Assembly: GCF_021869535.1 (NCBI RefSeq)
Contig: NW_026262669.1
Span: 9,982,001-10,046,000, forward strand
Length of the DNA: 64,000 bases
Source of the DNA: Mytilus californianus
Lineage: Eukaryota
Direction: 5' to 3'
The translations under genes were made by a program, and so were the position numbers. Below are positions 721 to 64,000 of the stretch, piece after piece; position 1 is the first letter of the stretch; each line of letters opens with the position of its first letter. The notes beneath the pieces were generated by a model, which worked only from the letters and a program-made list of their open reading frames with translations, was not told the DNA's origin and made no database searches.

Positions 721-2929
721 TGAGGGATAAATAGTCATAAATTTTATGTGTTCTTGATGATAATGTGGATTATCTTACAGTCCCCACAGCAGTAAAACAA
801 TACTTAAGTCTATCATGGACTGTGGACACCAACAAAAAATGTAAATGGCATAATCCTTGGCATTAGGAAAACTAGAAAGGAAAATCACTTTGAATCATGT
901 ATAACAGGTACATTTAGTTCTAATCTATAATCGGCTTTAACGAAAGTTCCGTTCCTGAAAACGAGATATTGTAAAGTTTGAAATAATTTCTGAGATAAAT
1001 TGATCCAAATAGGAATCACATACCTTCACTGAACAGGGTAAGCTTTCAAATATGATCATGGACTTTAGTGTGCAATGCAATTATATTTAGAAAGCTTACA
1101 CTAATATACATTGCCGCCTTCAAAATGTGTTATATGAACATAAAGATTGTTTGATGTATGTTTGTTATGGGTATTTTCTGATTGACAGCCTGTATTTTCA
1201 AATCAATACCAGACGAATGATCAAAACTTATTGTAATATATCTCATCAGGCACATATTCTAATTTTGACAAAAGATTAGAGAAACATGTGCCATGTTCAT
1301 GTCCCTTTTTGTTGGTATTGATAAACAATAAAGAAATATAGAACCATTTTAACTATCGGAAATCAAATCTAGCAATTTCTAGTCTATACATGATGATACT
1401 GGTTTGATAGTCAAACATGTATACACTGTATGACATAAACATGTACAGTAAACTAAAGTTGTTAGAAAGCATAACAAGAAAATTGTTTAAAATTGTGAGG
1501 GTAAATTTTATTTTTCTCCGCAATTGTGTAATGCTTCATACACCTATTGCCTCTTAAAAAGCACATGCATTGCACATTTATTGATATTTAGATTATTTAT
1601 CCATTTCTTAGGATAGTTCTTAAAGGATTGCAATCTCATCATACCTCTTGCCTTTGCATCCATTGTAATCCTACTTTAAAAGAAATATGTGAATATCCAA
1701 ATGGTAGAAATATTTCATATACGAACATTGAAACAGGAAAGTTTATATGCTATGAAAATGAATGATGGTCAAGGTTCATTGAATAAGTTATGCCCCTTCA
1801 TTAGCAATAGTGCTGACGCGGGTCTTAATCACTATCAAAGAATCAATCAATCCTTTAAGAGCTTCAGAATCAAAATATCTAATGAAGACAAGTTATAAGT
1901 AAGGACAGTTTAGAAGATCTCGATCATACAATAGGTAAAAATGTATTGAAAAAAAGGCATAAATATATTAAAATTGTAAATCTTTAATGTTTCTGTCAAT
2001 ATCTCGAGTTTAATAGTGAATGAACATTTAATAAGATGCCAGTAGATCATTGTATATATTTTCCATGTGTTCTGACGCTTAGAAAATTTTCATATCTAAT
2101 TTTAAATGCAATGTACCAAATTAAAATTCCAAGAACAACTTATTAATTTTTCTTTTCAAACTGTTTTATGTTACATCATATGACACTGACTATGAGGAGT
2201 CTATCAGAGAAATGAATCAATTTGAAGTTGAGGTTAATCTACTGGATATAGAAATATAAATCTAGAATCTCTTAAAGGTGCATATACATGTATAGTGCAT
2301 TCTTATTTAGACGGATTCTACACCGTGTAAGCAAAAGTATGTGGAATGATCCGAATTGAAAATCCCTGCACAATACAAATCAGAATAAAATTAAGAGCTA
2401 CGCCATACGCACATGGTACGCCCGTCGCCCTTTTTGCTCATCTCTATGCTTTAAAAATGATACTATACATCAGAAGTGCATTAGTTAAGGCACAAAATAA
2501 GCAAAAAATATTCAAAGGTTATATAACTAATTTTCGAGATATTTGATTTTTTTTAAAATGGCGGGAAAAGGCTGGCACAGACTTTTACCTTATATTTAGC
2601 ATTGACATTATTTGGGTCTCACATCGTAAGAAAAGATATATAGAATCTGCTGAAATTTTTGTAATGACCTTTTATGAGCTATTGAAGTCTTCTATGAAAA
2701 AGAAAAGTTGGTGATATGGGGCAAAATAATTTTACGCTGTATCTTAGGAAAAAAACCAAGGAGTCCAAACATCTGACAAAACTTCATAAATTTCACTTGA
2801 CTACATCCTTAAATGAATTTTATGTTCAACCAATAAGACTGCGAGCGTTGCTCAAATATACTCCCCCTTTTTCAACCCCTCAAAAAACCGTTGCATATAC
2901 AGTGGTACCTATTGACACAAAACAGGAAT

Positions 2930-10501: not shown

Positions 10502-10586
10502 ATGTCTTCATCATATGAATATCAGGCACAATTCCTCCTGTTAGGGGTTTAGTATTATACCGTCATAAAATATATGAGAAGAACAT
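10502..10586 (-). promoter_or_regulatory. Type II SECIS element in the retroelement 3' UTR
   Basis: Minus strand reads ATGA-cggtataatact(12)-AA-acccctaacaggaggaattgtgcct(25)-GA. Helix II is GGUAUAAU/AUUGUGCC (8 bp), the apical mini-stem is CCU-AAC-AGG, and helix I is AUGUUCUUCUCAUAU/AUAUGAUGAAGACAU. Confidence 0.82.
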
Positions 10587-10627
10587 AACCCGTGTCATGC
10601 CAACAACTGGTTTTAGAATAAATGTGT

Positions 10628-35846: not shown

Positions 35847-36329
35847 CTGAAATATCAACATAAAACCGACATCAAAACTTGGAACATTAACTGGACAACG
35901 GTGTGTAATAAGCATGAATACATTAATCATCAGATCAATCATTGGTCAAAGATGTCCAGTCACACATTTATCTGTATTCTACACACACCACAAATAAGCA
36001 ACATGGACATCAAAACTCTCATTATAAATAACATTTTTTTAAAGAAATGTATAGCATGTCCATATTAATGAATTTATAACGATAACGATAAGACAAGTAA
36101 CCTGAGAACCCACTATACTATATATTATTATATCAACTTGTTTATATTTTATCTAACTTGTCTTATTAAGATCATGCTTACATGCTTATTTAGTAAAATA
36201 ATCAATGTTTAAAAAAAATAAGTTTCAAAGATGTATACAAGCATTGCATATTTTTGCGTGAATTTGAGTGAGCTTTACTATCAGTTTTTCTCCATTTCAA
36301 AGGGGGTCAGATTTACAAGTATCATAATT

Positions 36330-39300: not shown

Positions 39301-40480
39301 TTGTCAGGATTCATGTTTAGTGGTGTTTGGAGTGATGAGGACTAAATAATCATCAATGGTGTGTGAATTTGTCAGGATTCATCTGTAGTGGTGTTTGAAT
39401 TGATGAAGTTGGATGGAATTCATGAACAGTCTTCATCACAGAGTCCAACATCAGGGAGTCCAACATCAGGGATGTATGAATTTATGATGATTCATATTCA
39501 GTATTTTATGAATGGATGAATATTTATCATCAGTGGAGTGTAAATTGATGAGTTTTGTTTTCATAGTGAAGAGTAAATGTATGAGTTATCATCATGACTG
39601 GTGTTTAAATCGAAAAACAAAATCATCTCTAGTAGTGTGTGAATTTATAAGGATCAGTCATCAGGGATGTGTGTTATAGTCAGGATGCATCATCAGGAAT
39701 TGTTAGTTAATTAGATTTCATTAACAGTTATGGGTTAATGTTATAAGGGTTCATCAGTAAAGTGAAAATTCATCATAATGCATCATCATTGGTTTGATAA
39801 TTTATAGGGCTTCACCATCAGAATTATTTAAATTTAGATGGTGATGTTTGAATGTATGGCGATTCAACTTCAGGGAAGTGTGATGTTATGATGTTCATCA
39901 TCAGCGGTTTGGGAATTGATAGGGCTTCACAATCAGAGGTCTTTGATTTGAAATGGTGATGTGTGAATGTACATGTATGACAACTCACCTTCAGGAAAGT
40001 GTGTTTTTATAAAGTTCATCATCAGTGGTGTGTGAATTTATAGGGCTTCGCCATTAGATGTCTTTGATTTGTAATGGTAATGTTTCAATATATGACGTTT
40101 CACGTTCAGGGAAGTGTAGTGTTATGAGGTTCATCATCAGTGGTTTGGGAATTGATAGGGCTTCACCACCAGAGGTCTTTGATTTTAAATGGTGATGTAT
40201 GAATGTTTTGACGATTCATCTGCAGGGAAGTATGATGGTCTGAGGTTCATCTTCAGTGGTGTTGTTTGTTTATTTATAAGGCTTCACCGTCAGAGGTCTA
40301 CGTTTTTAAATGAAAATGAATGTATGACGATTCATCTCCAGGGAAGTGTGATTTACTGAGGTTCATCTTCAGTGGTTTGTGAATTGATGAACATTCATCA
40401 TCAGTGATGTGTGCATGTAAAGGCCTTTACAATTAGCTAAATGTTAATTGATGAACATTCATCATACGAAGTAGGTAGGG
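36330..40480. repeat. ~32-bp-derived minisatellite domain; degenerate tracts also at 1-240, 14500-16460, 22760-23400, 26380-27480 and 33680-34900
   Basis: Recurrent ATGAGGATTCATCATCAGTGGTGTGTGAATTT-like units, with a near-perfect 32-mer run at 36338-36545. Confidence 0.85.
37073..39395. repeat. Homogeneous 68-bp tandem repeat, ~34 copies
   Basis: Unit TTAGTGGTGTTTGGAGTGATGAGGACTAAATAATCATCAATGGTGTGTGAATTTGTCAGGATTCATCT; 37141, 38161 and 39181 are each 1020 nt (15 x 68) apart. Confidence 0.97.
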
Positions 40481-45135: not shown

Positions 45136-47233
45136 TGGCAAATAAGTACTATCAGAATGGGACTTGCTCTAATTTATTGAAGGTGGGGGTATATTTTAAC
45201 CTTGAATTGAAAACAATCTGATGGTTAAATTGTTGTAAATTGTTGCGAGAATAACAGAATGATATAGTACTACAAATGGTTAGTTTTCAAAAAAAATATT
45301 TTTTTTAGTTAACATTTTTATCTTAAAATATTTGACTAATTATAGTCATTTTTGATTGCTTCATCTTAGACCCCCATTTTTATTTCAGACTAAAATTTAA
45401 GTTTAGAAACAAAAACTTACAAATAAAGGGTATCAATCAACTCAAAATTGCCTGGTTCATCACTATTAACTATGCTTTTGTCAATTTAGACTTAAGTTAA
45501 AAAAAATAACATGTATACCCCTTTACCAATATTTCTGGAACTTCAAAAATAGACCGAAATTACCATGTGAACCAAGCCATATTTGGGTGGCCATATCTTT
45601 TTTACCAACGGTTCAAATCTTTAAAAAGTTTAACATGATGTCCAGCTAGGCTTTACTTATCAATGAGATGAAAAAAAGAAAAATTCACCGACAGGTTTTT
45701 TTGGGGGTATAGTGTTGGGTACCCCCTTAATGATCCTCCCTCTGTTGTTAATTGCTAATGAAAAAGGGGGGTTTAATCAGCATAATGATCAATTACTAAT
45801 GTTCTGATTTATTTAACAAAGTATTTCTGGAACACATGTATACACATATTTGGTGACACTTAAACAATCAAGGAAAAAAATACGGATTTGTGTCCGCCCT
45901 CTGTTTTGATTTTTATTCGAGTTTCAAAACCGAAAATAGAATTAATCGTACAAGAATGGTTGATAACAATTTTTTATTTCTCGTAAAAATGTAAGTAATT
46001 ATTGCATTTATTATGAATGTCTTTACAATGATATCTAATTATTCAAAGAGTTCAGACACGACAGAAATGTGCAAATTTGTAAGCATAATATAATCGACCA
46101 TTTTTGGTTAAGCAAATGTGATTAATCGTAGGAAGTGTTGACAGACGGACAATGATATACCTACGTCCTGTCGTCGTCAGGTGTACAAAGAGGGGCATTT
46201 ACAGCTCACTATATGATATAGATTTGCTCATTGTTGAAGTCAAAATTTGTCAAAAACATACGACAGAGATACATTTGTTTATTAGTTACCGCTATCTTGA
46301 GTTGTCATATACAGACAAGGACACTCTGGGCCACAGGAATGAAAGCAAACTGTGGGTAATGATGTTAAAAAAAGACAATACAAGATCCTCTTGGTATACA
46401 TCTACATGTCCCAAGTTTTTTAGCAGCTGATATAAAATGTATGATTTGTATTTGTTATAAATATGTAAATGTTAAAATTCAAACATGGAAATTTCAAAAT
46501 GGATATATGAATGTTTTATTATATTTCGTCTTCTTGTTTGTGTCAAGTAATCGTTATTCGTTATTATTTTCGTTGGTTGGATTCCCTTTTTTTTCTGTTT
46601 TGTTGTTGTATAAAATCAGGTACATTCATGGCTTTTCATGATGGAGGAATTATTGAAACTGGCAAAGACTGTGCATTAAGTATGTGATAACTAATCATCT
46701 GTATTTGGGTATTAATATTTCTTGAAAGTAAAACGTGTTTGATTAAAATAGCCTCTTTGTTCAAAAACAATGTTATTTCTTTTTGAGGCCCCCTTCGAGC
46801 ATTCAATTGTTTCAATTTTAGGAGTTTGACTACAGTTTGGTTCAGGTATTGGTTTAAGTAGATTTAAAGCAACCAAGCCCCTTTCTTTTTCCGAATTTTT
46901 AATTTTTATGATTATTGTATGCGATTTATTTCAATTGAATGAGACATTTCATGGTTATTGATATTACATTTGTGTATTTATTACATTACTTTATAGTCCA
47001 AGGATGTAAAGCCAGACATTACAACTATTAAGATCTATGGTCGTTTATACAATTGTCTGAGCTCCTCCTATTCTTTCTTTTTTTTTTTCTTCATATAAAG
47101 AGCAATCAATGGCGGGATTTGTTAGTGCAATAAATAAGAAAAAAAAACATTCAGTTAATGAGCTCCTTTAACAACAAAAATTTACAACACACTACCATCA
47201 AAAGAAAAACACTTCATTCCTGTTTCAAATATA

Positions 47234-48980
47234 CAGATGGGTGCAGTCCTAACCTGTACAGCAAGTTAACTTGATAACCAGTCATTTGGACTGGTCAAAG
47301 TTAACCTGTGACCGGATTTAGGACTGCTCTGACCAGTCCTAGGACCATAATCTAGTTCACTTGAAAAGCGGACTTGGTCCTAGGACTGTTTTTATGTCTG
47401 CCAAAACGTTAACTTGGAAACAGGTCCGCTATTGATATAAGTTAATTTCGAACCAGTCCTGTCATAAGTTAACATAAGTTAACTTCGAAACCAGTCCTGC
47501 CCTAAAATTAACATGAGTTAACTACGAAACCAGTCCTGCCACAAAGTTAACATAAGTTAACTTTTGCTTTGACAAATCCGATCGGAACCAGACCTGTTCC
47601 CAAGTTAACTTTTGACTGGTCTGCTCAACACTTAGTTAACTTGTAACCAGGACCGCTCTACATCGATTTTTTAAAAATATTTTTTAATATCTTTGTTTCG
47701 TAGTATAAATATCGAAAATAAAGTAAAATTAGTACTTCCGTTATTTTATAAACAGGATTAACTATAAATATTTGAAAATAAAGTACACATAAAACGTTGC
47801 TTGTAACACAAATTTATCTGTGATCTGCCAATCTATAGATTAAAAAACGATCTTGGTTGCAATGATAACGGGCACTGAATATATATATTCCAATACCTAT
47901 CAAATTCAACCATATTAGCACTTTATTATGTATATATATGAAAGGACGTATATTAGATGTTAGTTATACGTCCTTGTTAGTTATATGTCCTTGTTAGTTA
48001 AACGTCCTTGATCTATGTAGCCACAATCAGCAATATTTTAATTTCAGGATTGAATTTATTATACAAATTGAAAGCATCATTTACACACATGACTACAAAT
48101 GTTTGTTCGCATACATTTAGGGTGCCAGCATGTCCTCCTTTTATTCAAAATATTGATACGTAACAAAATTTCAGTAGTTTTGATACCTCATGCTGACTTG
48201 TACAACAGAATTGTTTGACCTCATCGACCAAAACAGACCATATGTGCACTTTAATTTGTAAATCTTTATACCCACATATTAAATCAGCCACATTTTTTAT
48301 GTCAGGATTCAATGTGTAATACAATGGACAGCAATATTGCAATAAAATAACAACAAATTTTTATTCGCATAAATTAAGGTTGCCATTATGTCCTCCTTTT
48401 ATTCAAAATATTGATACGTAGTAAAATTTCAGTAGTTTTGAAACCTCATGCTGACTTGTACAACAAAATTATTTGACCGCATCGACCAAAACTGACCATA
48501 TGTGCACTTTAATTTGTAAATCTATATACCGGCATAGTAAATCAGCCATATGTTTTATGTCAGGACTCAATGTATAATACAATGGACAGCAATATTGCAA
48601 TACAATAACAACAAATTTTTGTTCGCATAAATTCAGGGTGCCACCATGTCCACCTTTTATTCAAAATATTGATACATAACAAAATTTCAATAGTTTTGAT
48701 ACTTCATGCTGACTTGTACAACAAAATTATTTGACCGCATCGACCAAAACTGACCATTTGTGCACTTTAATTTGTAAATCTATATACCGGCATAGTAAAT
48801 TAGCCATATTTTTTATGTCCGGATTCAATGTATAATACAATGGACAGCAATATTGCAATACAATAACAACAAGTTTTTGTTCGCATAAATTTAGGGTGCC
48901 AGCATGTCCTCCTTTTATTTAAAATATTGATATGTAACAAAATTTCAGTAGTTTTGATACCTCATGCTGACTTGTACAAT
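47234..48980. mobile_element. Truncated sister TIR element with a reverse-orientation ~258-bp satellite (~3.8 monomers, 48010-48980)
   Basis: TA|CAGATGGGTGCAGTCCTAACC end with a GTTAAC-rich subterminal region, closely matching 60429 onward. No second TIR seen. Confidence 0.85.
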
Positions 48981-49924
48981 AATTCTAGCCTTCGATTCGA
49001 AAATGTGGATTCTTTTACAAGTATAACTCATGACTTGTAAAGAACTATGGCTGAGTCTAATGGTAATGAAAATATATTGATAAATTATGCTATACAACTC
49101 TTAACAGAAAGAAATGTTTGTGTTGTTTTAAGTCAAGAAAATACTAAGACAGAAAACGTTCAGGTGGTCACATCTCCAAAGTAATGTACCCTTTAAAACA
49201 CATTAATGTATTCTTCAAAAAAACAAAATATTTGCCTGTAATACATTGACAATGGCTGACATGGTAATTTAGGTGTTAACTAAGTGAGATATGGTTGCAT
49301 ACAAATATCTAAAAATGCAGATATAGTACAAACATGACTTGCTATGTAAAATTCAAATTCATGGGATGTGAACTGGTTCCCATTTCAAACAGAGAAAACA
49401 TGGTTTATCTATTGGTTTAAATTAGATTTAAATTTTATTTAAATAGTTTCGAGTACTCTTAGATCGGTACTTTGTGATTTTGTCTATTTGTTTAATTTCA
49501 TGAATTGATGCTATACCACCGTCATAGATTTAAGGGAAGTTTTAACGCACAAGTTTAACCTCGCCACATCCTAATTAAGATTGACCCTTCTCGGGAGCTC
49601 TTTGATTAAGTGGTTGTCGTCCGTTGATGTCGGTCATATTTGATTTTTGTTTATCATTTATACATAAATCAGGATGTTTGTTTTCCCATTTGAAATATTT
49701 GATATTTTGTTATGCCGGTATTATTGTTAATCTATGTTGTGAAGACTGTAACGTGACGTATAGTTGTTAACATCCTCATTCTGTTTGTGTATTGTGGTCT
49801 GTTGTCTTATTGCAAATCGTGCAACATCCCCTTATCTTAGTGTGTAATTAAGGTACGTATACTAAACTAAAAGAAATAAATAGAGAAACAAATTATGAAG
49901 AAAATGTTTAAATGTTGATATGGA

Positions 49925-50530
49925 ATTGATATCGTCGACAAATATAAACAGACGAACCAGGAGAAACTAAATTGTCTATATAGATAATTGTAGCAGATAA
50001 ACATTTGGTACATGTGTCGATATCGACTCGATGTCGTCGATATCGTCGATATCGACATGTCAAAACAGACGAAACAGGACAAACTAAATTGTCTATTCAT
50101 ATAACTGTAGGAGATAAACATTTGGAACATAATTTTTCGATGTCGACACGATGTCGTCAATAATGTCGATATCGACATCTAGAATAAACGATCTGGGAGA
50201 AACTAAAATTGTTTATATACATAACTGTGAAACAGATAGACAGTTCGAACATAATGTGTCGATATCGACTCGATATCGTCGATATCGTCTATATCGACAT
50301 CTTAAAACAGACGAACCAGGAGAAACCAAATTGTCTATATAGATTATCGTAGTAGATAGTCATTTGAAACATAGTGTGTCCATATCGACTTGATGTCGTC
50401 GATATCGACATCTTTATTAGACGAACCAGGAGAAACTATAAATTGTCTATATAGAAAAATGTAGCAGATAAACATTTGGATCATTATTTGTCGATATCTA
50501 CTCGATATCGTTAATGTCGTCGATATCGAG
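49925..50530. repeat. ~118-bp tandem repeat (~5 units) with CpG-rich GTCGATATCGAC palindromes
   Basis: acagacgaaccaggagaaac anchors near 49949, 50066, 50186, 50307 and 50419. Confidence 0.85.
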
Positions 50531-51156
50531 ACTACATTGTGTCTTGGACATATTTTTAATCGATTGGATGTGTGTCTTCATTGGAATACATCATTACTAT
50601 TTGTAAAAGTACACTGATTTTATTCAGTAATTTTCTTAATTCCTTATGAAAATGTTAAAGGTTTTGTCAAATTACTACTCTGATCACGAAAAAAATAGAT
50701 CATACTATCTACAGTGCAAGTTTAATTTTACTCAAAACAAACACTCTACTTCACTACAAATCACAGAACAGCACACTGTATTGGATTTAGTAAATGAATC
50801 TGTTATACAAATATATGATAGTCTGTAGAGCTGAACAGGCGAAGATTACCATTTACGTTTTGATATTTTATTCTTTACACATTCATAGCAAGTTGTTTGG
50901 GGGTGGAGGTGAACAAATTTAATGTTAACAAACTTAAGTGTCGAACTTTTAAATAAGCTGTATGCCAGGATACTAGAACACAGTCGTTTCATTTTTCATT
51001 CATTTTCTAAATTTGCTAATTTTTCAACAATATTTTTTTTACAGTTTACACTATTATTACTTACACACACAAAAAAAGCTTCTGAGAAAATCAGATATTT
51101 CTAAAATGCATCCACAAATACTGTTACTGCATTTAATCTGAAAAAAAAACATTTAA

Positions 51157-51704
51157 GGTAGATCATAGGTATATATGTCTTGAGATAGAATTTTCTTATA
51201 CTTTGCCAACATGAAGATTTTACTATGCTTTTTTCAAAAATATAATAAAAAGTATGGGTCACCGTGCTATTTTTCAAGCTATGAGTCGTTGAACATTGCC
51301 TAAATGTGGTTACATTGTTCATGAAAAAACACATGTGTGTGCATAAAAAAAAAATCTACGAGATAGAATTTTGATATAAATTGTTATAAGATAGGTTTTA
51401 TAATATGTTTTAAGAAAATAAAAAGAAAAAATGGTGTCACCGAACTTGTTTTCTTGCTACAAGTAAAAATAAAAAATGTCTTCCTTATAAGTCCAGTATA
51501 TATGTTTTACTTAAAGAGTTATCTCCCCTTAAATGGCTTATTTGAAATAATATATTCTAAAAACACAAAATTTGAGTTATAAAATAAATCACTAAGTTTT
51601 CTTTATATATATAAACAGTCTAACCAATCAATTGCAAATCTGTCTTCAAATTTGCAGATTTGGGCAAAATACAATCCAAGATGGCGGTATACCATGAATC
51701 TACC
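51157..51704. mobile_element. Kolobok-like MITE
   Basis: TTAA|GGTAGATCATAGGTATA ... TATACCATGAATCTACC|TTAC; imperfect TIRs. Confidence 0.65.
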
Positions 51705-52901
51705 TTACACAAATATATATTTTATACTAAATGAATAACCGGCTGTACAGTTTATTTATTTTGAAATATGTCCAAAATATCTGCGGCCTGTTCGCGTCTA
51801 AGTTTGTTGTGATAGTAACCAAATTCATTGCAATAGTGTTTTCAAGTCTCAAAAGACATTGACAGAGCCTACACTTGCTATGATATTGTAATATAAAAAT
51901 GATGATTGATGGAAAAACAAGTACAAGAGCATGATGTCATTTGGAAAACCGTATTAAAGAGATTTAAGTGAAATCTGCATTGGATTTGATTTTCTATGCT
52001 CGTTTTGTAATATTACAAATCCTCACGTTTTTAAATGTTTATATCTATTGGCTTCCTCTTAAATTGACCTTATTACGAAATTTAACATTAAAACTGGATG
52101 TTTCAACGTCAATGTACCATGACAGAGGGGAATGGCCAAATAATATCTAAAGAAGATGTGATTATCACGATATGTGTTTGTGATGTTTGTCATATCGAGA
52201 AATGTCAATTCAACAAGTTCAACACTTACTTCAATCAATGAAGGAAAGCTCCAAATGACAGTGTGACACCATGGTACATAATGGTACGAGGACTTTACGT
52301 TTTATATAAGTACTTATTCACTGAATCATCCGGTGTATCCAATATATTTTTTTCATAAATATATACAGTATATTATCACATCACTTACCTTAATCAATGC
52401 ATGAAATATTCCAATGACAGTGTGGCACAATGGTACAGGGATATTCGACGACTTTTTCAATTGTATCTATAGGGCCAAATTATTTTCACCTGAAACAAGC
52501 TTTTTAATTGAATACAAATCGTCGAACAGAACTCTGTTCCTCTTATATGATTTCTAACTCATAATATTATGTTTGTAAGCATAATTATCGATATTTTACC
52601 TTGCAAAAGTTTTAATATGAAGAGCATATTTAATTTTTTTTTCAAATAGAATGCATGTTCCTTGAATCCTATTTCTTTTTTATTTTGCAATCTGCTGTTC
52701 AAATCTCAAATTGTATTTAAGGATGTACTTAGGTGAAATTAAAAAAAAATATATAGAAATTAAAATTGATACTTTAAGTCGGAAGAGCATTAGTTAAGCA
52801 ACAAACTAAGCTAAAAATATTGATAAGTTATGGACCTCCTTTTCGGGATATTTAAAAAAAAATTAAATGGCGGGAAAAGGCTGACTCGGACTTTTACCTT
52901 A

Positions 52902-55900
52902 CAGTTGGGTGCAGACCAAGCATTACATAAAGTAAACGCAGGTTAACGCCGCGTGCACATATTTCGTTAGTGAACTTCAATTTTCGCGTTTACTAGTACA
53001 CGCGCGTTTACTATAATTAAGTTAACGCGGTCAAAATGGAAATTTCTAATGTCTACCCGAGTAAACGGGCGTTTACTATGTGTCCGTTTAGTCAGTAGTA
53101 AACGGGCGTTTACTTCAGATTTCACAAGTTTATTTTTTACGTGCACTTAAAAGTAAACGGGCGTTTACTACAGATTTCACAAGTGTATTTCTACGTGCAC
53201 TTGAAAGTAAACGCGCGTTTACTTTTCGCGTTAACTGATTGTGTAAATTAAGAAATAAACTTCGTGTTCATTTGCACATTAATTTTTAATTAAAACGAAT
53301 TGTATCTTAATATTTTATGTACAAGTGTTTCAAACCAGAACAATTCAAAAACACTTTTAATTCGAAATATTAACTTTTATTAATTACAAAAAATCAGTTC
53401 CAACAATTTTCCCCGAGTTGCAGATTTTCTATATTTTCTATTCAAAAGTTACATGTACAAATATCGAGGCAAATAGAAAGGTTATCCAACACATCGGATA
53501 AATATTTGTATATGATGGGATATAAACATCATGGTATACGTTGCTTCGTTCCCCATTTTTAACAGTCTCTTCCTAAATATAACTCAATGCATTTAATACA
53601 TGGATTTTTAATCGTGATTCACCTTGTTTGCCTTGGATTTACAAGATTTAAGATTCTGTTTTGCCAAATGTTCGATCGAGACAGACTTATCCATAACGAT
53701 TATAAATGATATCTGGGACGTCCGAAAAATATACTCGTTCTGAACATGAAAAAAAATATTTGCCCCTGGACGTTAGGCTACAAACGAAATCTATTAACTG
53801 CCATAATGTATTAACAGTACACTTTTCCAAGAAGAGAACTTCGTATACTTTGGATACATGTTAACTCGTACTTTTCAGTATAAACTACTTTAATCAGTCA
53901 TGTCAGTGTTGGATGATGCCGTTAAATATTATAGTTTTGTTTTAAATACAAACCATCCCGAACTACTGACTTAAGTGACAGTTCATTATGCAACTATAAA
54001 GATTTCCATAAAAAATGCAAATATGGTCAGTTTTGGTTGATGCGGACAAATAATTCTGTTATATGAGTCAGTCTAAGGTATAAACACACTAAATTTGTTT
54101 ATTATTCAATATTTTGAATAAAAAGAGTACATGCTGGCACTATAACTTGATGCGAACAAAATTGTGTAGTCATTGTTTTCTAATATTACTGTCATTCGTT
54201 TTATACAGATCCTCCTGACCTAAAAATATAACTAGTTTACTATGCAGCTTTATAGATTAGCATGATATAGTGCAAATATAATCAGTTTGGGTTGATGCGT
54301 ACCAATTATTTTCTTATACGAGTCAGTCTGAAGTATGAAAACTACTGATAATTCCTTATGATTCAAAATTTTGAATAAAAACAGGACATTTTGGCACTCT
54401 CAATTGATGCGAACAAAATTTTGTAGTCATTGTGGTCCAATATTGCTATCATTTGTTTTATACAATCCATCCTTACATAAAAATATAACTGATTTACTAT
54501 GCGATTATAAGATTTACATAAAAAAGAGCAAATTAGGTCAGTTTTGGTTGATGCAGACAAATAATTTTGTTATACGAGTTAGTCTGAGGTATAAAACCTA
54601 CTGATATTTGTTCACGATTAGATATTTTGAATAAAAAGAGGACATGCTGGCACTATAAATTGATGCGAACCAAATTTTTTAGTCATTGTGTTCCAATATT
54701 TCTGTAATTTGTATTATGCAGTCCCTTCTGACCTAAACATATAACTGAATTACTGTGCAGCTCTATAGATTAACTTGATAAAGTGCAAATATGGTCAGTT
54801 TTGGTTGATGCAGACAAATAATTTTGTTATAAGAGTCAGTCTGAGGTATAAAAACTACTGATATTTGTTTACGATTAGATATTTTGAATAAAAAGAGGAC
54901 ATGCTAGCACTATAAATTGATGCGAACCAAATTTTTTAGTTAATGTTTTCCAATATTGCTGTCATATGTATCATACAATCCATACTGATATAAATATATT
55001 ACTGATTTAGTATGCGACTATAAGATTTACATAAAAAAGAGCAAATTAGGTCAGTTTTGGGTGATGCGGAAAAATAATTTTGTTATACGAGTCAGTCTGA
55101 GGTATGAAAACTACTGATATTAGTTAACGATTCAATATTTTGAATAAAAACAGGACATTTTGGCTTTCTCAATTGATGCGAACAAAATTTTGTAGTCATC
55201 ATGATCCAATATTGCTATCATTTGTTTTATACAATCCATCCTTACATACAAATTGTATTCATTGTGGTCCAATATTGCTATCATTTGTTTTGTACAATCC
55301 ATCCTTGCATACAAATTGTATTCATTGTGGTCCAATATTGCTATCATTTGTTTTATACAATCCATCCTTGCATAAAAATATTACTGATTTACTATGCAAC
55401 TTAAGATTTATAGAAAAAATGAGCAAATTAGGTCAGTTTTGGTTGATGCAGACAAGTAATTTTGTTATACAAGTCAGTCTGAGGTATGAAAACTACTGAT
55501 ATTTATTTACGATTCAATATTTTGAATAAAAACAGGACATTTTGGCACTCAATTGATGCGAACAAAATTTTGTAGTCATTGTGGTCCAATATTGCTATCA
55601 TTTGTTTTATACAATCCATCCTTACATAAAAATATAACTGATTTACTATGCGATTATAAGATTTACATAAAAAAGAGCAAATTAGGTCAGTTTTGGTTGA
55701 TGCAGACAAATAATTTTGTTATACGAGTCAGTCTGAGGTATAAAAACTACTGATATTTGTTCACGATTAGATATTTTGAATAAAAAGAGGACATGCTGGC
55801 ACTATAAATTGATGCGAACCAAATTTTTTAGTCATTGTGGTCCAATATTTCTGTAATTTTTATTATACAGTCCCTCCTGACCTAAAAATATAACTGAATT

Positions 55901-58635
55901 ACTGTGCAGCTATATAGATGGACTTGATAAAGTGCAAATATGGTCAGTTTTGTTTGATGCAGACAAATAATTTTGTTATAAGTGTCAGTCTGAGCCCACT
56001 CTGAGGTATAAAAACTACTGATATTTGTTCACGATTAGATATTTTGAATAAAAAGAGGACATGCTGGCACTATAAATTGATGCGAACCAAATGTTTTAGT
56101 CATTGTGGTCCAATATTTCTGTAATTTGTATTAAACAGTCCCTCCTGACCTAAAAATATAACTGAATGACTGTGCAGCTATATAGATGGACTTGATAAAG
56201 TGCAAATATGGTCAGTTTTGGTAGATGCAGACAAATAATTTTGTTATACAAGTCAGTCTGAGGTATAAAAACTACTGATACTTGTTTACGATTAGATATT
56301 TTGAATAAAAAGAAGACATGCTGGCACTATAAATTGATGCGAACCAATTTTTTTAGTCATTGTGGTCCAATATTTCTGTGAATTGTATTATACAGTCCCT
56401 CCTGACCTAAAAATATAACTGAATTACTGTGCAGCTATATAGATGGACTTGATAAAGTGCAAATATGGTCAGTTTTGGTTGATGCAGACACATAATTGTG
56501 TTATAAGAGTCAGTCTGAGGTATGAAAACTACTGATATTTGTTTACGATTCAATATTTTGAACAAAAACAGGACATTTTGGCACTCTCAATTGATGCGGA
56601 CAAAATTTTGTAGTCATTGTGGTCCAATATTGCTATCATTTGTTTTATACAATCCATCCTTACATAAAAATATAACTGATTTACTATGCGATTATAAGAT
56701 TTACATAAAAAAGAGCAAATTAGGTCAGTTTTGGATGATGCAGACAAATAATTTTGTTATACGAGTCAGTCTGAGGTATGAAAACTACTGATATTTGTTT
56801 ACGATTAGATATTTTGAATAAAAAGAGGAGATGCTGGCACTATAAATTGATGCGAACCACATTTTTTAGTTAATGTTTTCTAATATTGCTGTCATTTGTT
56901 TAATTCAATCCATACTGATATAAAAATATTACTGATTTAGTATGCGACTATAAGATTTACATAAAAAAGAGCAAATTAGGTCACTTTTGGTTGATGCAGA
57001 AATATAATGTTGTTATACGAGTCAGTCTGAGGTATGAAAACTACTGATATTTCTTTGCAATTCAATATTTTGAATAAAAACAGGACATTTTGGCACTCTC
57101 AATTGATGCGGACAAAATTTTGTAGTCATTGTGGTCCAATATTGCTATCATTTGTTTTATACAATCCATCCTTACATAAATATATAACTGATTTACTATG
57201 CGATTAAAAGATTTACATAAAAAAGAGCAAATTAGGTCAGTTTTGGTTGATGCAGACAAATAATTTTGTTATACGAGTCAATCTGAAGTATAAAAACTAC
57301 TGATATTTGTTCACGATTAGATATTTTGAATAAAAAAAGAGGACATGCTGGCACTATAAATTGATGCGAATTAAATGTTTTAGTCATTGTGGTCCAATAT
57401 TTCTGTAATTTGTATTATACAGTCCCTCCTGACCTAAAAATATAACTGAATTACTGTGCAGCTATATAGATCGACTTGATAAAGTGCAAATATGGTCAGT
57501 TTTGGTAGATGCAGACAAATAATTTTGTTATACAAGTCAGTCTGAGGTATAAAAACTACTGATGTTTGTTAACGATTAGATATTTTGAATAAAAAGAGGA
57601 CATGCTGGCACTATAAATTGATGCGAACCAAATTTTTTAGTTATTGTTTTCCAATATTGCTGTCATTTGTATTATACAATCCATACTGATATAAAAATAT
57701 TACTGATTTAGTATGCGACTATAAGATTTACTTGATGAAGTGCAGATATGATCATTTTTGGTTGATGCGGAAAAATAATTTTGTTATACGAGTCAGTCTG
57801 AGGTATGAAAACTACTGATATTTGTTTACGATTCAATATTTTGAATAAAAAGAGGACATGCTGGCACTATAAATTGATGCGAATTAAATGTTTTAGTCAT
57901 CGTGGTCCAATATTGCTGTCATTTGTATTATACAGTCCCTCCTGACCTAAAAATATAACTGAATTACTGAGCGGCTATATATATTTACTTGATGAAGTGC
58001 AGATATGATTATTTTTGGTTAATGAGGTCAATTAATTTTGTTAAACGAGTCAGCCTGAGTCGGACAGTGTGAGATGTGAAAAATGCTGGATTTTGGTGAT
58101 GATTTAATTATTTTAATAAAAGAAGGACATGCTTGAACTGTTTGTTTGTGCAGAAAAAAGAAATTTACTATGATCAATTTTCAATTAATTTAAGAGGTGT
58201 TATTAAATTATTAATTAACTGTTAATGTCTATCGAAAATGAACAGTTGGTCATTTAATTTTGATGTACTTTATCATTTGATATTTAAGGTCTGTGTATCC
58301 AGGATACGATGACAATTTGCGTTAACGCGCGTTTACTACAAACAGTAAACGTGCGTTTACTTTTGACGAAATTAGAAGACGGGCCTTTTTCACGTTAACG
58401 CGGAAGTAAACGCGAAAGTAAACGCCCGTTTACTCTTTACAAAATTAGAAGACGCGCCGATTTTGCGTTAACGCAAAGGTAAACGCGAAAGTAAACGCCC
58501 GTTTACTTTTTATGTCTACTGAAATTTCTGAGTTAACGCACAGTTAACGCGGCGTTTACTTGAAGTGCACGCGAGTAAACGCCACGTTAACTTATTCCGC
58601 CCGTTTACATGTAATGCTTGGTCTGCACCCAACTG
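52902..58635. mobile_element. 5.7-kb non-autonomous TA-TSD TIR element carrying a satellite array
   Basis: Perfect 27-bp TIRs CAGTTGGGTGCAGACCAAGCATTACAT, TA at 52900-52901 and 58636-58637, subterminal GTAAAC/GTTAAC palindrome clusters, no transposase ORF. Confidence 0.92.
53990..58110. repeat. ~256-bp tandem satellite, ~16 monomers
   Basis: The anchor gaataaaaa recurs at 54116, 54373, 54629, 54886, 55142, 55524, 55778, 56046, 56303, 56560, 56816, 57072, 57328, 57587 and 57843. Confidence 0.95.
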
Positions 58636-59702
58636 TATATTTGCATTGGTTTTATTTGGGTCTCAAATCGAAAGAAAAGAAATCTAGAATCTGCTTAAAG
58701 TTTGGTTATTGACCTTTTATGAGCTATTGAAGTCTTATATGAAAAGAAAAATGGGTGTCATGGGGCAAACATTTGACCCTGTATCGTAGGAAAAAATCAA
58801 AGGAGTTTGAACACTTACACAAATTCCTAAACATAACCTAAGTACATCATTAAATACTTTCAGTTGATGACATTTTAACATCCTAGTCTCTCGTGTGTGT
58901 TTTCGATTTTTGTTGTTTTAAATTCTTGATAGTCTGTACAGTTAATCAGGCAACGAATACTATTTATGTATAAAAATTAAACAAATATATTTGCTATTTT
59001 CATTTGTTAGCACTGTGTTAATAAATCTGCTGGCTAACTGCTCGTCTTGGAGGGTATCTGCAGCCCAGTACTCTGTGTTTGCTAAGGACATTATTCTATA
59101 ATTCCATACTCTTTTTAATGTCCGAAATTGTTCAGAAACCTAGCTTTCAATGAACTTGATTTTTAAAAGTTAATTTTGTCATGATGCAAATTCCTCATGT
59201 TTGTATATGCTTATATATATTGCTTTCCTCTAAATCTGACATAATAATACGTTTTAACATTTAAACTATGTAACTGTTTCAAAGTCAATGTACTATAGGG
59301 GAATGACCAAAAACTATCTATAGACAGGAGATGTGCTCAAACTGATATTTTATTTGTTTATTTATTTTTTTTTATGAGAAGAGGGTGAAATGTCGTTACA
59401 CGATATTTCAATATAACACTTACCTAAAACAATGAGGGGATGGACAACATGGATGTAAACAAACTTTAGTGTCATACTTTTGGGAAAAAAATATATGTCA
59501 GGACGCTTGAACAGAGTCGTTTTATTTTCATTTAAGTTTTGAATCTGCTAACTGTTCAACGTTACATTTTGATACGTAATACACTAGTAATACATACACT
59601 AATGAAGAAGCCACCATTACGTTCAGATCTCTCTCGAAAAAATAGCTGTTACTTCATTTGATCTGAAAAAAAATTACATTCAAATATATATATATATATA
59701 TT

Positions 59703-60428
59703 TATGTTGTTTGTGCAATATTTAAACCCCTCTAACAAGAAATTTGTTTTGCATGCACACGTATAAAAATTGCGGTTTTTATCCAACGCAATCATAGGTT
59801 TGAACGTTGTTTTCAATTAAGACTTGTTTATATTTTTTCGTTTGAGCTTGTATTATATTTGCCTTCGGGTTAATGATCCGTTCATCCTATTTTGACTACT
59901 CAAAATTCAAGAGTCTATCCTAAATTGAGGTAAATTGTATGGCTTTCCAAATACCGTTTCGATTCCTAACATCACTGAAGAGACATTAATTGTCGAAATC
60001 CGGATATGGTGTACAAAAACCTTTGCACCTTTTGTTTGCGGTATACCATCTTTTCCGCAAGTTTATTGTTTTCTGTTTAGTATTAAATTTATAATTAAGA
60101 TCCATTTATTACATCGGTGATCCGTTTATTTGGCAATCGCCAATGGCAGTCAGCAGGGTTTAAGAACATTTGTTGTTCGACCTGTTAGTCAAATGCGTTT
60201 TGTTAAGATATACTTTTTCACATTTTTGGTCATTTGGAAAATGTTTGTTTGTGCTGTATTTAGACCCCTCTAACAAGAAATTTCTTTTGCATGCACACGT
60301 ATAAAAATTGCGGTTTTTATCCAACGCAATCATAGGTTGAACGTTGTTTTCAATTTAGACTCGTTTATATTTTTTCGTTTGGGCTTGTATTATATTTGCC
60401 TTCGGGTTTATATGATCCGTTCATCCTA
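59703..60428 (+). mobile_element. 538-bp direct-repeat unit carrying the hammerhead (retrozyme / PLE pseudo-LTR-like), ~1.35 copies
   Basis: 59703-59889 is repeated at ~60243-60428 (cccctctaacaagaaat at 59727 and 60265). It abuts an (AT)n tract at ~59684-59700. The second copy is cut at TA 60427-60428 by a TIR element. Confidence 0.75.
59969..60012 (+). ncRNA. Type I minimal hammerhead ribozyme
   Basis: Stem I ACAUCA/UGGUGU, core CUGAAGA (59975-59981), stem II GACA-uuaau-UGUC, GAAA (59995-59998), short stem III AU-ccgg-AU, cleavage triplet AUA with scission after 60006. Confidence 0.85.
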
Positions 60429-63400
60429 CAGATGGGTGCAGTCCTAACCTGTACAGCAAGTTAACTTGATAACCAGTCATTTGGACTGGTCAAAGTCAAC
60501 CTGTGACAGGATTTAGGAATGCTCTGACCAGTCCTAGGACCACAATCTAGTTAACTTAAAAAGTGGACTTGGTCCTATGACTGTTTTTATATCTGCCGAA
60601 AACGTTAACTAGAAAACAGGTCCGCTATAGATATAAGTTAACTTCGAAACCAGTTTTGTCATAAGTTAACACAAGTTAACTTTGATTTTGACAACTCTGA
60701 TCGAACCAGACCTGATATCAAGTTAACTTTTGGCCTGGTCTGCTCAACACAAAGTTAACTACATCGATTTTTTTTTAATATCTTTTAATGTCTTTGTTTC
60801 TTGGTATAAACATAAAAAAATAAAGTCAGTTTAATAGTTCCGTGATATAAACATGATTAAATACATGTAGCTCCATGTTGAAGTGATCTATTTGTAAATA
60901 AAGTACACATAAAACTTTGCTTGTTTATATACAAATATATCCGTGATCTGCCTTTCTATATATTAAAAAAACGATAATGGTTACAATGCTAACGAGCTGA
61001 ATATATATTCCAATAGTCATATCGAATTCTTAAATCGTATTAACCATATTTGCACTTTATAATGTAAATCTATATAGCCGTAAAGTAAATCAGAAATATT
61101 TTTATGTCGGGATAGAATATATAATACAAATGACAGCAATATTGGAACACAATCACTACAAAATTTTACCCGCATAAATTAAGAGTGCCAGCATGTCCTC
61201 CTTTTGTTCAATATATTGATACGTAACAAAATTTCAGTATTTTTGATTCCCCAGGCTGACTCGTATAGCAAAATTATTTGACCGTATCAACAAAAACTTA
61301 CCATAGTTGCACTTTATCATGTAAATCTATATAGTCGCATAATAATTCAGTAATATTTTATGTCAGTATGTATTGTATAATACAAATGACAGCAATATTG
61401 GAACATAATGTGAACACAAAATTTTGTCCGTATCAATCTAGATTGCCAGCATGTCCTCTTTTTAATCAAAATATTGTCTCGCAACAAAATGTCAGTAGTT
61501 TTGATACCTCAGACTGACTCCTATACCAAATTATCTGACCATAACAACCAAAAACTGATCATATTTGCACTTTATTTTGTAAATCTATATAGCCGCATAG
61601 TAAATCAGCAACTATTTTTATATCAGGATTAAATGTATAATAGAAATGACAGCAATATTGGAACACAACAACTACAAATTTTGTCCGCATAAATTTAGAG
61701 TGCCAGGTGGGCATGTTCTCCTTTTTGTTCAATATATTGATACGTAACAAATTTTCAGTAGTTTTGATACCTCAGGCTGACTCATCTAACAAAATTATTT
61801 GACCGTATCAACCAAAACTGACCATATTTGCACTTTATTTTGTAAATCTATATAGCAGCATAGTAAATCAGCAACTATTTTATGCCAGGATTTAATATAT
61901 AATACAAATGAGAACAATATTGGAACACAACAACTACAAATTTTTGTTCGCATAAATTTAGTGTGCCAGCATGTCCTCCTTTTGTTCAATATATTGATAC
62001 GTAGCAAAATTTCAGTAGTTGTGATACCCCAGGCTGACTCCTATAACAAAATTATTTGACCGTATCAACCAAAACTGACCATATTTGCACTTTATTTTGT
62101 AAATCTATATAGCCACATAGTAAATCAGCAACTATTTTTATGTCAGGATTTAATGTATAATACAAATGACAGCAATATTGGAACACAACAACTACCTTTT
62201 GTTCAATATTTTGATACGTAACAAAATTTCAGTAGTTTTGATACCCCAGGCTGACTCCTATAACAAAATTATTTGACCGTATCAACCAAAACTGACCATA
62301 TTTCCACTTGATTTTGTAAATCTATATAGCCACATAGTAAATCAGCAACTATTTTTATGTCAGGATTTAATGTATAATACAAATGACAGCAATATTGGAA
62401 CACAACAACTACAAAATTTAGTCCGCATAAATTTAGAGTGCCAGCATGTCCTCCTTTTGTTCAATATACATGATATATTGATACGTAACTAAATTTCAGT
62501 AGTTTTGATACCTCAGGCTGACAAAATTATTTGACCGCATTAACCAAAACTGACCATATTTGCACTTTATTTTGTAAATCTATATAGCCGCATAGTAAAT
62601 CAGCAACTATTTTTTTGTCAGGATTTAATGTATATTACAAATTATAGCAATATTGGAACACAACAACCATGACAACTACAAATTTTTGTCTGCATAAATT
62701 TAGAGTGCCAGCATGTCCTCCTTTTGGTCAATATACATGATATATTGATACGTAACTAAATTTCAGTAGTTTTGATACCCCAGGCTGACTTGTATAGCAA
62801 AATTATTAGACTGCATCAACCAAAACTGACCATATTTGCACTTTATTATGTAAATATTTATAGCCGCATAATAATTCAGTAATATTTTTATGTCAGGATT
62901 TAATGTATAATACAAATGACAGTAATATTGGAACACAATGAATACATACATTTGTCCGCATAAATTTAGAGTGCCAGCATGTCCTCCTGTTGCTCAATAT
63001 CTTGATATGTAACAAAATTTCAGTACTTTTGATACCTCATGCTGACTGGTATAGCAAAATGTTATGACCGTATCAACTAAAACTGACCATATTTGCACTT
63101 TAGTAAGTAAATCTATATTGCTGCATTATATTTAATCAGAAGTTTTTTTTATGTCAGGATGTATTGTATTATAATACAAATGACAGCAATATTGGAAAAC
63201 AATGGATGCAATATCTTTTCCGCATCAATTTAGATTGTCAGCATTTCATCTCTGTATTAATAATATTAGACCATCACTAAAGTGAGTAGTTCAGGATGGT
63301 GTGTATAACAAAACTATTTGACTGCATCATCCAACACTGACATGTCTGATTTCATTTTTACTTTATAATGAAAAGTATATGACGTTTTCTTCTGGGAATA

Positions 63401-64000
63401 GTATACTGTTGGTACATTATGTCGGTTGATTGAATTAGTTTGTAGCTAAACCTCAAGTGGCAACTATTTCATTCATGTGCACAACGAGTATATTGTTTTG
63501 GAAGTCCCATATCATCATTTTTAATCCGTAAAGACAAATCTGACGAAATTGACGAGATTGTTCATAATTATTCAACACCTTATGTATCCGGACACTGTAC
63601 AATTTTCGTTAGAATATTTTATCGAAAACAGAATCGTAAATCCAAGGCAAACAAGGTGAATTACGATGAAATATCCATGTAATGCATGAAGTTTAATTTA
63701 GGAAGAGACTGTAAAAAAAGGTGAACGAAGCAACGTCGACAATGATGTTGATATCCCATGACATAAAAATATTGTTCCGTTGCGTTGGATAACCTTTCTA
63801 TCCGCCTTCTGATTAAATAAAAACTTGCCTTTCTTTAATGATAGTTGTATGTGATCACAAGCGTGTAATTTTATAGCCATTGTTTAATGTATATAAGAAT
63901 ACATGAAATGAAAAAAAGATTTTTTTTTAATGTGTATAATATCGATGTATTAAAAGCTCAAGTCTGATATCATAAGTCATAAACACGGTAATCTGTCATA
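60429..64000. mobile_element. Sister TIR element with a reverse-orientation satellite (~61050-63260), running off the window
   Basis: Same end as 47234. Inserted at the TA of gttcatccTA (empty site visible at 59888). 63265-63830 is homologous to the reverse complement of 53430-53990. Confidence 0.85.

What the first reader, a model, noticed from the sequence alone, without database searches (positions are those of the whole stretch)
47234..64000. Two sister families of TIR transposons ferry the same ~256-bp satellite
Seen: three elements within 17 kb. One is complete (52902-58635, CAGTTGGGTGCAG end, GTAAAC/GTTAAC subterminals); two have a CAGATGGGTGCAG end with GTTAAC subterminals. All carry the same satellite in the same orientation relative to the equivalent end. 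The complete element and the 60429 element also share unique internal DNA (53430-53990 matches the reverse complement of 63265-63830). Inference: the satellite spreads by cut-and-paste transposition, and the repeated hexamers are transposase binding sites that diverged between families.
Basis: partly seen in the sequence, partly recalled or inferred. Interest (0 to 1): 0.7.

Follow-up and report, generated by a model that had tools for sequence, protein, structure and literature searches.

The report
Satellite-carrying DNA transposons in a mussel
Two related families of non-coding jumping genes in a mussel genome each carry their own version of a ~256-letter tandem repeat and have scattered it to many sites; this is a clear new example of a known way that satellite DNA spreads.

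Summary
B (52902-58635) is a complete element with perfect 27-bp inverted ends and a TA duplication. The predicted far end of the 60429 element lies 256 bp past the window, with 2 mismatches and followed by TA. Uninterrupted paralogous copies of both target sites hold a single TA. The 47234 element has lost its far end.

Genome-wide there are about 1,650 such ends of just two tip types, here called T and A. Sixteen independent complete copies (0.9-9.6 kb) are all TA-flanked. Monomers are family-specific: 80% identity between families, 86% within. The junction between array and flanking DNA is shared, so the array is an inherited part of the element.

A third, older lineage carries a ~285-bp distant version of the repeat. 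Both kinds of end also occur in two other species.

Not settled: no transposase partner was found, so the binding-site idea is untested. About half of the sampled arrays have a recognisable end nearby, and this is a lower bound.

This is the pattern published for the Xenopus miDNA4 Tc1/mariner MITE, so it is a new member of a known kind. First readers of this scan noted similar TA-flanked satellite carriers elsewhere in this genome.

The parts
47234..48976 (+). Element A. This is an A-family copy that keeps only its left half. It consists of TA + TIR (47234-47272), a GTTAAC-rich subterminal region (to ~47660, with a 39-bp mini-array at 47437-47563), unique DNA, then 3.7 satellite monomers (48024-48976, minus orientation). 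There is no right end.
52900..52901 (.). TA target-site duplication, left of B
52902..58635 (+). Element B, a complete T-family copy of 5,734 bp. Layout: TIR 52902-52928; left subterminal region to ~53240 with four copies of the 18-bp palindrome AGTAAACGNNCGTTTACT; unique DNA 53241-54011; satellite array 54012-58059 (about 16 monomers); unique DNA 58060-58296; right subterminal region 58297-58635 with three palindromes; TIR 58609-58635.
58636..58637 (.). TA target-site duplication, right of B
   Evidence: empty-site contigs
60427..60428 (.). TA target-site duplication, left of C
60429..64000 (+). Element C, an A-family copy of 3,828 bp that runs 256 bp past the window (to L001:256). Layout: TIR 60429-60467; subterminal region rich in AAGTTAACTT to ~60770; unique DNA; satellite array 61043-63341 (minus orientation); unique DNA 63245-64000 homologous to B 53473-53978. 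The right subterminal region and a TIR with 2 mismatches lie in L001:1-256.
2591..2592 (.). Paralogous empty site for B. An uninterrupted copy of the host repeat holds a single TA here. A second such site is at 8796-8797.
59888..59889 (.). Paralogous empty site for C. It is the same position in the neighbouring unit of the 538-bp tandem repeat and holds a single TA. Another is at L001:796-797.

Best explanation
The region holds three copies of non-autonomous class II (TIR) DNA transposons that insert at TA and duplicate it. That combination is the signature of the Tc1/mariner/pogo group.

There are two related families:
- T has the tip CAGTTGGGTGCAGACC and clusters of the 18-bp palindrome AGTAAACGNNCGTTTACT plus GTTAACGC.
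- A has the tip CAGATGGGTGCAGTCC and clusters of the 10-bp palindrome AAGTTAACTT.

Both families share an internal module made of about 750 bp of unique DNA joined to a ~256-bp tandem repeat. This module was already in their common ancestor, or was passed between them once. It has since diverged in step with the ends. A third lineage has T-like ends and a ~285-bp version of the repeat.

Inferred mechanism: a transposase encoded elsewhere (not found) binds the 27-39-bp TIRs and probably the subterminal palindromes. It moves the whole unit, array included, to a new TA. Between and after moves the array changes length, from 0 to more than 20 monomers. It does so by unequal exchange or replication slippage, which builds higher-order repeats of 2, 4 or 5 monomers.

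Copies that lose an end (A; L019; L020) are stranded. They can then be amplified by segmental duplication into larger blocks, such as a ~42-kb cluster between T tips on another contig.

Shown here: the TIRs, the TA duplication, the empty sites, the copy numbers, the family-specific monomers and the shared array-flank junction. Inferred: the transposase type, the binding sites and excision.
For: - Ends and target sites: perfect 27-bp TIR in B and TA on both sides. The predicted distal TIR + TA of C was found. Single-TA paralogous empty sites exist for B (2591-2592, 8796-8797) and for C (59888-59889, L001:796-797). Contigs of another species join B's two flanks directly (loose ends at 58636).
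- Copy number: 680 exact TA+16-nt ends with 0 control hits. There are 1,707 ends at up to 2 mismatches against 57 control hits. Only two tip types exist; all other variants are single-base changes.
- Independent insertions: 17 of 17 complete copies are TA-flanked. Their flanks are unrelated except for L017/L018.
- Family structure: T copies share the order left end, unique DNA, array, unique DNA, right end. Their arrays span 0-5.8 kb.
- Monomers: 173 of 173 have their nearest neighbour in their own family. Mean identity is 86% T-T, 86% A-A and 80% T-A. For 35% of T monomers the closest relative is in a different copy.
- Junction: the boundary between unique DNA and array is conserved in 8 of 10 T copies. 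It is homologous in C, where B 53892-53978 matches C 63351-63274 right at the array edge.
- Third lineage: the ~285-bp repeat in L021/L022 is a distant homologue of the satellite, with nhmmer E-values down to 8e-9.
- Other species: both kinds of end occur in two other species, and alignments start exactly at the TA|CAG boundary.
- Non-coding: no ORF of 60 aa or more in the shared unique DNA and no Rfam hit.
Against: - No autonomous partner was found. None of the 30 best DDE_3 loci has these tips or motif clusters. No DDE_3, DDE_1 or mariner-type hit lies near a listed tip on the contigs where tips could be listed. The superfamily assignment therefore rests on the TA duplication and the tip alone.
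- Long subterminal arrays of short palindromes are not typical of Tc1/mariner.
- Only 10-13 of 24 hand-checked array loci have a recognisable tip at a fitting place.
- Array order could not be shown to be inherited monomer by monomer. Shifted registers align almost as well, 90% against 92-94%.
- Some spread is by duplication, not transposition.
Confidence: 0.85

Rival explanations
1. The T and A families are not simply diverged sisters. One family acquired the module of unique DNA plus satellite from the other by recombination or template switching, giving a chimeric origin. This would explain why the core is alignable at 80-85% while the ~340-bp subterminal regions are not alignable at all.
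For: Only one of the two array-flank junctions is shared between T and A. The uniqL side is shared. The other side ends at monomer position ~66 in T and ~213 in C. The subterminal regions share only the tip and short motifs. Rare hybrid tips exist, 4 of the first 100 listed.
Against: The tips themselves are clearly homologous (20/27), and the first GTTAAC sits at a similar distance from the tip. Divergence of the core (80-85%) is similar to that of the monomers (80%), as expected for co-divergence. Subterminal mini-arrays turn over fast anyway, with periods of 39, 55 and 73 bp.
Confidence: 0.3
2. Each copy landed with one monomer or none and grew its own array afterwards. On this view transposition spreads a seed, not the satellite array.
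For: Most monomers (90 of 149 T monomers) are closest to a monomer of their own array. Arrays have private higher-order repeats, for example 97% identity at lag 2 in L003. Satellite-free copies exist (L006, L007, L014).
Against: The satellite-free copies are internal-deletion derivatives that also lack adjacent unique DNA. 52 of 149 T monomers are closest to a monomer in another, independently inserted copy. The partial monomers at both array edges are the same in independent copies. All young T copies carry 8-21 monomers.
Confidence: 0.1
3. The arrays spread mainly by segmental duplication or ectopic recombination, and the TIRs are incidental.
For: L017 and L018 have 100% identical flanks 360 kb apart. 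L019 and L020 are tandem duplications, with periods of 6.8 and 7.5 kb, of one-ended copies. About half of the sampled arrays have no tip nearby.
Against: Sixteen independent copies have unrelated flanks and a precise TA duplication. Empty paralogous sites exist. There are about 1,650 ends against 57 in the control.
Confidence: 0.05
4. These are members of the bivalve pearl/DTC84/Helentron type of tandem-repeat carriers.
For: The host group is the same, and so is the general layout of tandem repeats between two flanking modules (PMC3879986, PMC7492417).
Against: Here the element has 27-39-bp terminal inverted repeats and a proven TA duplication. It has no microsatellite module and carries up to more than 20 monomers. 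pearl/DTC84 have a putative AA duplication, a tetranucleotide microsatellite and up to about five core repeats.
Confidence: 0.02

Closest known systems
miDNA4, a Tc1/mariner-type MITE of Xenopus tropicalis that carries a satellite (Scalvenzi and Pollet 2014, as summarised in PMC9659126 and PMC12628747)
   Same: It is a non-autonomous TIR element of the TA-target group. Its internal satellite is present from a single monomer up to arrays of variable length. The proposed path to TIR-less arrays by decay of the ends matches the stranded copy A and the tip-less arrays seen here.
   Different: The host and the sequence are different. Here there are two (or three) sister families, each with its own satellite variant. 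Arrays reach several kb, elements reach about 10 kb or more, and the subterminal regions are long and rich in palindromes. Sequence relatedness was not tested.
pearl / CvA / DTC84 / MgE tandem-repeat 'MITEs' of bivalves, and Helentron-borne satellite-like repeats of Crassostrea gigas (PMC3879986, PMC7492417)
   Same: They occur in bivalves, are non-coding, and have tandem repeats between two flanking modules. They link dispersed elements to satellites.
   Different: Those elements have a putative AA duplication, short (10-20 bp) terminal or subterminal inverted repeats, a microsatellite module and up to about five repeats. In oyster they are Helentron-derived. The elements here have true TIRs, a TA duplication and long arrays.
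Tetris and other foldback-type satellite sources in Drosophila (PMC4079207)
   Same: A DNA transposon supplies the building blocks of a satellite, and array size varies among copies.
   Different: In Tetris the satellite derives from the long TIRs themselves. Here the TIRs are short and the array is an internal module. The left and right subterminal regions are not inverted copies of each other.

Membership tests
Tc1/mariner/pogo (ITm) group, non-autonomous derivative | TA target-site duplication | tested here: met
   17 of 17 complete copies are TA-flanked. Single-TA paralogous empty sites exist for B and C.
Tc1/mariner/pogo (ITm) group, non-autonomous derivative | Terminal inverted repeats, commonly starting CAG/CAGT in Tc1 and pogo (own knowledge) | tested here: met
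   The TIR is 27 bp and perfect in B. It is 39 bp at 90% in C. The tip is CAG[T/A]TGGG.
Tc1/mariner/pogo (ITm) group, non-autonomous derivative | An autonomous relative with the same ends that encodes a DD(E/D) transposase | tested here: inconclusive
   The top 30 DDE_3 loci lack the tips and motifs. DDE_1, DDE_3 and mariner-type hits are not near listed tips on C1, C2 or C13. Only part of the genome could be cross-checked, and no more DNA could be fetched.
MITE in the strict sense | Small size (usually under ~600-800 bp), non-coding, TIR plus TSD, high copy number | tested here: not met
   The non-coding, TIR/TSD and copy-number criteria (~1,650 ends) are met. The size criterion is not: complete copies are 0.9-9.6 kb, and tip pairs lie up to 17 kb apart.
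Satellite-bearing Tc1/mariner MITE of the miDNA4 kind | An internal satellite, variable from none or one to many monomers, inside TA-flanked TIR elements | tested here: met
   Arrays range from 0 to 21 full monomers among copies of one family.
pearl / DTC84 type | AA duplication, tetranucleotide microsatellite module, up to about five core repeats | tested here: not met
   The duplication here is TA. TRF found no microsatellite module and arrays of up to 10.6 copies in a single row.
Foldback elements | Long inverted terminal regions built of subrepeats | tested here: not met
   Only 27 bp of the two ends of B are inverted copies of each other. The rest shares motifs only.

The most novel reading that the evidence does not exclude
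A long-lived lineage of TA-inserting transposons in Mytilus has a satellite array as an obligatory internal module. The array has co-diverged with at least three sets of ends (T, A and a T-like lineage with a ~285-bp unit). These elements are the main or only home of this satellite, about 3 Mb in total. The two tip types and their different palindromic subterminal motifs mark a split in transposase specificity, or a TA-inserting transposase that is not of the ordinary Tc1/mariner kind.
Probability: 0.2. Interest if true: 0.55.

Novelty: new member of a known kind. Interest (0 to 1): 0.35.

Why it matters
This is a clean case, rich in copies, of how satellite DNA disperses and diversifies inside mobile elements. 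It offers exact ends, proven target duplications, family-specific monomer variants, and copies at every stage: complete, internally deleted, one-ended, and grown to tens of kb.

In a bivalve, most published tandem-repeat carriers are Helitron-like, so this adds a true TIR/TA carrier. If the matching transposase were found, the two tip and palindrome sets would form a natural pair for studying how transposase-end specificity diverges. It does not change the current picture of satellite origin.

Tried and rejected
1. Autonomous partner. No transposase-like ORF (none over ~145 aa) was found in the satellite-free or odd-sized copies or inserts: L003, L004, L005, L011, L012, L019-L022. Tip variants were searched genome-wide, and only single-base variants exist, with no third tip. 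Pfam DDE_3, DDE_1 and Transposase_1 were searched in the genome. No locus had these tips or motif clusters, and none lay near the listed tips. The nearby Tc1+BEN element (L055/L057) shows no related ends.

Coordinate lists were cross-checked by hand instead.

3. Monomer-by-monomer inheritance of array order is inconclusive. Shifted registers align nearly as well. The best colinear pair, L017/L018, is a segmental duplicate.

4. The right end of A was sought by BLAST with the right end of C and with all loci. Nothing was found.

5. Literature search by sequence words gave no hit. Searches for a Mytilus satellitome or a 260-bp Mytilus satellite gave nothing relevant.

6. Rfam on 47000-64000 gave no hit at gathering score.

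7. A 3-bp (TWA) duplication was rejected, because the flanks do not repeat beyond TA. A Helitron/pearl-type reading was also rejected.
Full report
**Source.** The window is G000:C89:9982001-10046000 of a 1.65-Gb assembly with 175 contigs, the largest of 142.4 Mb. These figures fit the published Mytilus californianus reference (PMC9710001: 176 scaffolds, 1.65 Gb, largest 142.4 Mb). I treat this as likely, not proven.

**Observation.**
- The 13-nt tip CAGWTGGGTGCAG occurs four times in the window, against 0.03 expected. All four sit at the stated places and each is preceded by TA.
- B (52902-58635) has a perfect 27-bp TIR.
- A and C share their left ends: 92.9% over 254 bp, then 75% over a further ~420 bp.
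- B 53473-53978 matches the reverse complement of C 63274-63801 in three blocks of 80-85%.
- The ~256-bp repeat forms three arrays in the window plus the following 20 kb, and no others.
- The array is inverted in B relative to A and C. So is the shared unique DNA.

I fetched the DNA past the window. C ends at L001:256, that is 64256, with ...GGACCACACCCATCTG followed by TA. This has two mismatches to the predicted 13-mer, and the 39-bp TIR is 90% complementary to 60429-60467. C is therefore 3,828 bp long. A has no right end. Nothing after 48976 matches C's right part or any fetched locus.

**Proof of insertion.**
- B sits inside another dispersed repeat. Its left flank aligns to window 2451-2592 and its right flank to 2591-2814, and likewise to 8761-8797 and 8796-8995. 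The overlap is the dinucleotide TA in each case.
- C sits in a 538-bp tandem repeat. The neighbouring units (window 59878-59889 and L001:786-797) read ...catcc TA ttttgac... with a single TA.
- Contigs of another species join B's two flanks directly at 58636.
- So both elements are true insertions that duplicated TA.

**Genome-wide counts.**
- TA plus 16 nt of tip occurs 680 times exactly, with 0 control hits.
- It occurs 1,707 times at up to 2 mismatches, with 57 control hits.
- The inner 12-mer occurs 853 times, with 47 control hits.
- Only two tip types exist. T is ...CAGTTGGGTGCAGACC and A is ...CAGATGGGTGCAGTCC. They stand about 2:1 among the first 100 listed, with 4 hybrids. Every other variant is a single-base change.
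- I fetched 20 loci. Of 17 complete copies, all have TA on both sides. Their flanks are unrelated except for L017/L018, whose flanks are 100% identical, so that pair is a segmental or assembly duplicate.
- Complete copies measure 0.9-9.6 kb. Plus/minus tip pairs in the lists lie up to 17 kb apart. One ~42-kb cluster at C1:19.219-19.262 Mb lies between T tips.

**Family anatomy.**
- T copies share this order: left end (~340 bp), unique DNA (~750 bp), array, unique DNA (~240 bp), right end (~335 bp). The young ones are 95-98% identical to B outside the array.
- The array spans 0-5.8 kb.
- The satellite-free copies L007, L014 (T) and L006 (A) are internal-deletion derivatives that also lack adjacent unique DNA.
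- No ORF of note lies in any copy, and there is no Rfam hit.

**Relation of T and A.**
- The tips align at 20 of 27 positions. A GTTAAC follows 30-45 bp from the tip in both. The rest of the subterminal regions cannot be aligned.
- The subterminal regions are mini-arrays (periods 55 and 73 bp in B, 39 bp in A) of short palindromes.
- T carries the 18-bp palindrome AGTAAACGNNCGTTTACT, four times on the left and three on the right, plus GTTAACGC. A carries the 10-bp palindrome AAGTTAACTT. Enrichment is 60-100 times over the rest of the window.
- Motif clusters occur nowhere else in the window.
- Across 18 left and 12 right T ends, motif columns are a little better conserved than spacer columns: 93.7% against 89.1% on the left, and 87.4% against 82.9% on the right. 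The circular-shift test gives p of about 0.02-0.04.
- This is weak support for a function. It is no proof of transposase binding.

**The satellite.**
- I extracted 173 full monomers from 12 T and 4 A copies. Every one has its nearest neighbour in its own family. Mean identity is 86% within T, 86% within A and 80% between them.
- The unique DNA next to the array differs by a similar amount between families, at 80-85%.
- The boundary between unique DNA and array is conserved in 8 of 10 T copies. It includes a degenerate partial monomer. It is homologous in C, where B 53892-53978 matches C 63351-63274 at the array edge.
- The array was therefore part of the element before the families split, or it moved between them together with the unique DNA.
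- The other boundary differs: monomer position ~66 in T against ~213 in C. This leaves room for a chimeric origin.
- A third lineage (L021 6058-8599; L022 203-4958) has T-like ends and a ~285-bp tandem repeat. That repeat is a distant homologue of the satellite, in the same relative orientation, with nhmmer E-values down to 8e-9.

**Array dynamics.**
- 52 of 149 T monomers are closest to a monomer in a different copy, and 90 are closest to one in their own array.
- Arrays have private higher-order repeats: lag 2 in L003 and L004, lag 4 in L015 and L009, and lag 5 in L020.
- Arrays are thus both carried along and remodelled in place.
- A direct test of inherited monomer order failed, because shifted registers align nearly as well.

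**How much of the satellite is element-borne?**
- A 16-mer found in 56% of sampled T monomers occurs 4,878 times in the genome. One found in 67% of A monomers occurs 2,482 times.
- That suggests roughly 10,000-12,000 monomers, or about 3 Mb (0.2% of the assembly). With about 1,650 ends and about 12 monomers per array-bearing copy, elements could hold a large part of these. This is a rough estimate.
- I cross-checked the place lists by hand. They cover all of C1 for the A word, C1 up to 19.3 Mb for the T word, and C2 up to 15.4 Mb.
- Of 24 array loci, 13 have a tip in the right orientation nearby. Four of these have both tips. Three of the 13 have the tip 1.8-3.4 kb away and are less sure. Eleven have none.
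- Tips with a mutation in the searched word are missed, so this is a lower bound.
A sizeable minority of arrays are nevertheless tip-less.

**Other species.** Contigs of two other organisms (coded B and C) cover both the T end (58300-58635) and the A end (60429-60800) at 88% likeness or more. Several alignments start exactly at 60426/60427. The single-copy DNA between the elements is covered only in runs of the window's own species. Both families therefore predate this species or have moved between species. The satellite itself was not tested in those runs.

**Autonomous partner.** None was found.
- The 30 best DDE_3 loci have no tip at up to 3 mismatches and no motif clusters.
- No DDE_3 or DDE_1 place on C1, C2 or C13 lies near a listed tip. 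Mariner-type hits are few, and none is on those contigs.
- On those three contigs (297 Mb), every tip pair 10 kb or less apart in the exact-tip list was fetched and holds no ORF. Three further short pairs that appeared only in the later 12-mer list could not be fetched.
- The superfamily call therefore rests on the TA duplication and the CAG tip.

**Comparison with known systems.**
- The closest published case is miDNA4 of Xenopus tropicalis. It is a Tc1/mariner MITE whose internal satellite ranges from one monomer to arrays, and decay of its ends is proposed to leave classical arrays (PMC9659126, PMC12628747).
- The bivalve pearl/DTC84 elements differ. They have a putative AA duplication, a microsatellite module and up to about five repeats.
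- This finding is a new member of a known kind. What it adds is two or three sister families with co-diverged satellite variants, and unusually long, palindrome-rich subterminal regions.
- First readers of this scan noted other TA-flanked satellite carriers elsewhere in this genome. I did not check whether they belong to the same families.

Noticed in passing
The array continues on the far side of C. Rfam gave no hit at gathering score on 47000-64000.
   Followed up: partly
window 52713-52901 + 58636-58857; copies at 2451-2814, 8430-8995, 19020-19143: B is nested in another short dispersed repeat with 22-bp inverted ends (52713-52734 / 58836-58857). This is probably a small MITE. It is very abundant in all four runs laid (depth peak at 58636-58803).
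   Followed up: partly
L017 and L018 (G000:C13:67240643-67244912 and 67600959-67605486): Two T copies 360 kb apart have 100% identical 200-bp flanks and differ by one monomer. They are a segmental duplication or an assembly duplicate.
   Followed up: partly
L019 (G000:C1:19219139-19229138) and L020 (G000:C2:38960658-38970657): One-ended copies (left tip plus array, no right tip) are repeated in tandem with their flank, with periods of 6,762 and 7,455 bp. In C1 the satellite words run on to 19.260 Mb, and a T right tip lies at 19261683. That makes a ~42-kb block between T tips.
   Followed up: partly
L021:6058-8599 and L022:203-4958: These are T-like elements with a ~285-bp tandem repeat distantly related to the 256-bp satellite. 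L021b is flanked by TTTCTA on both sides instead of a plain TA, and it has a near-duplicate left end 5.9 kb upstream.
   Followed up: partly
window 49946-50529: A 120-bp tandem repeat of 4.9 copies contains runs of the palindromic GTCGATATC motif. It lies just downstream of the truncated element A.
   Followed up: no
window 36001-40000: Strong GC skew (0.39-0.47) is sustained over 4 kb, next to a 116-bp tandem repeat at 40014-40388.
   Followed up: no
tips genome-wide: The two tip types differ at positions 4 and 14 in a swapped way: CAGT...CAGA against CAGA...CAGT. Hybrids are rare, 4 in the first 100.
   Followed up: partly
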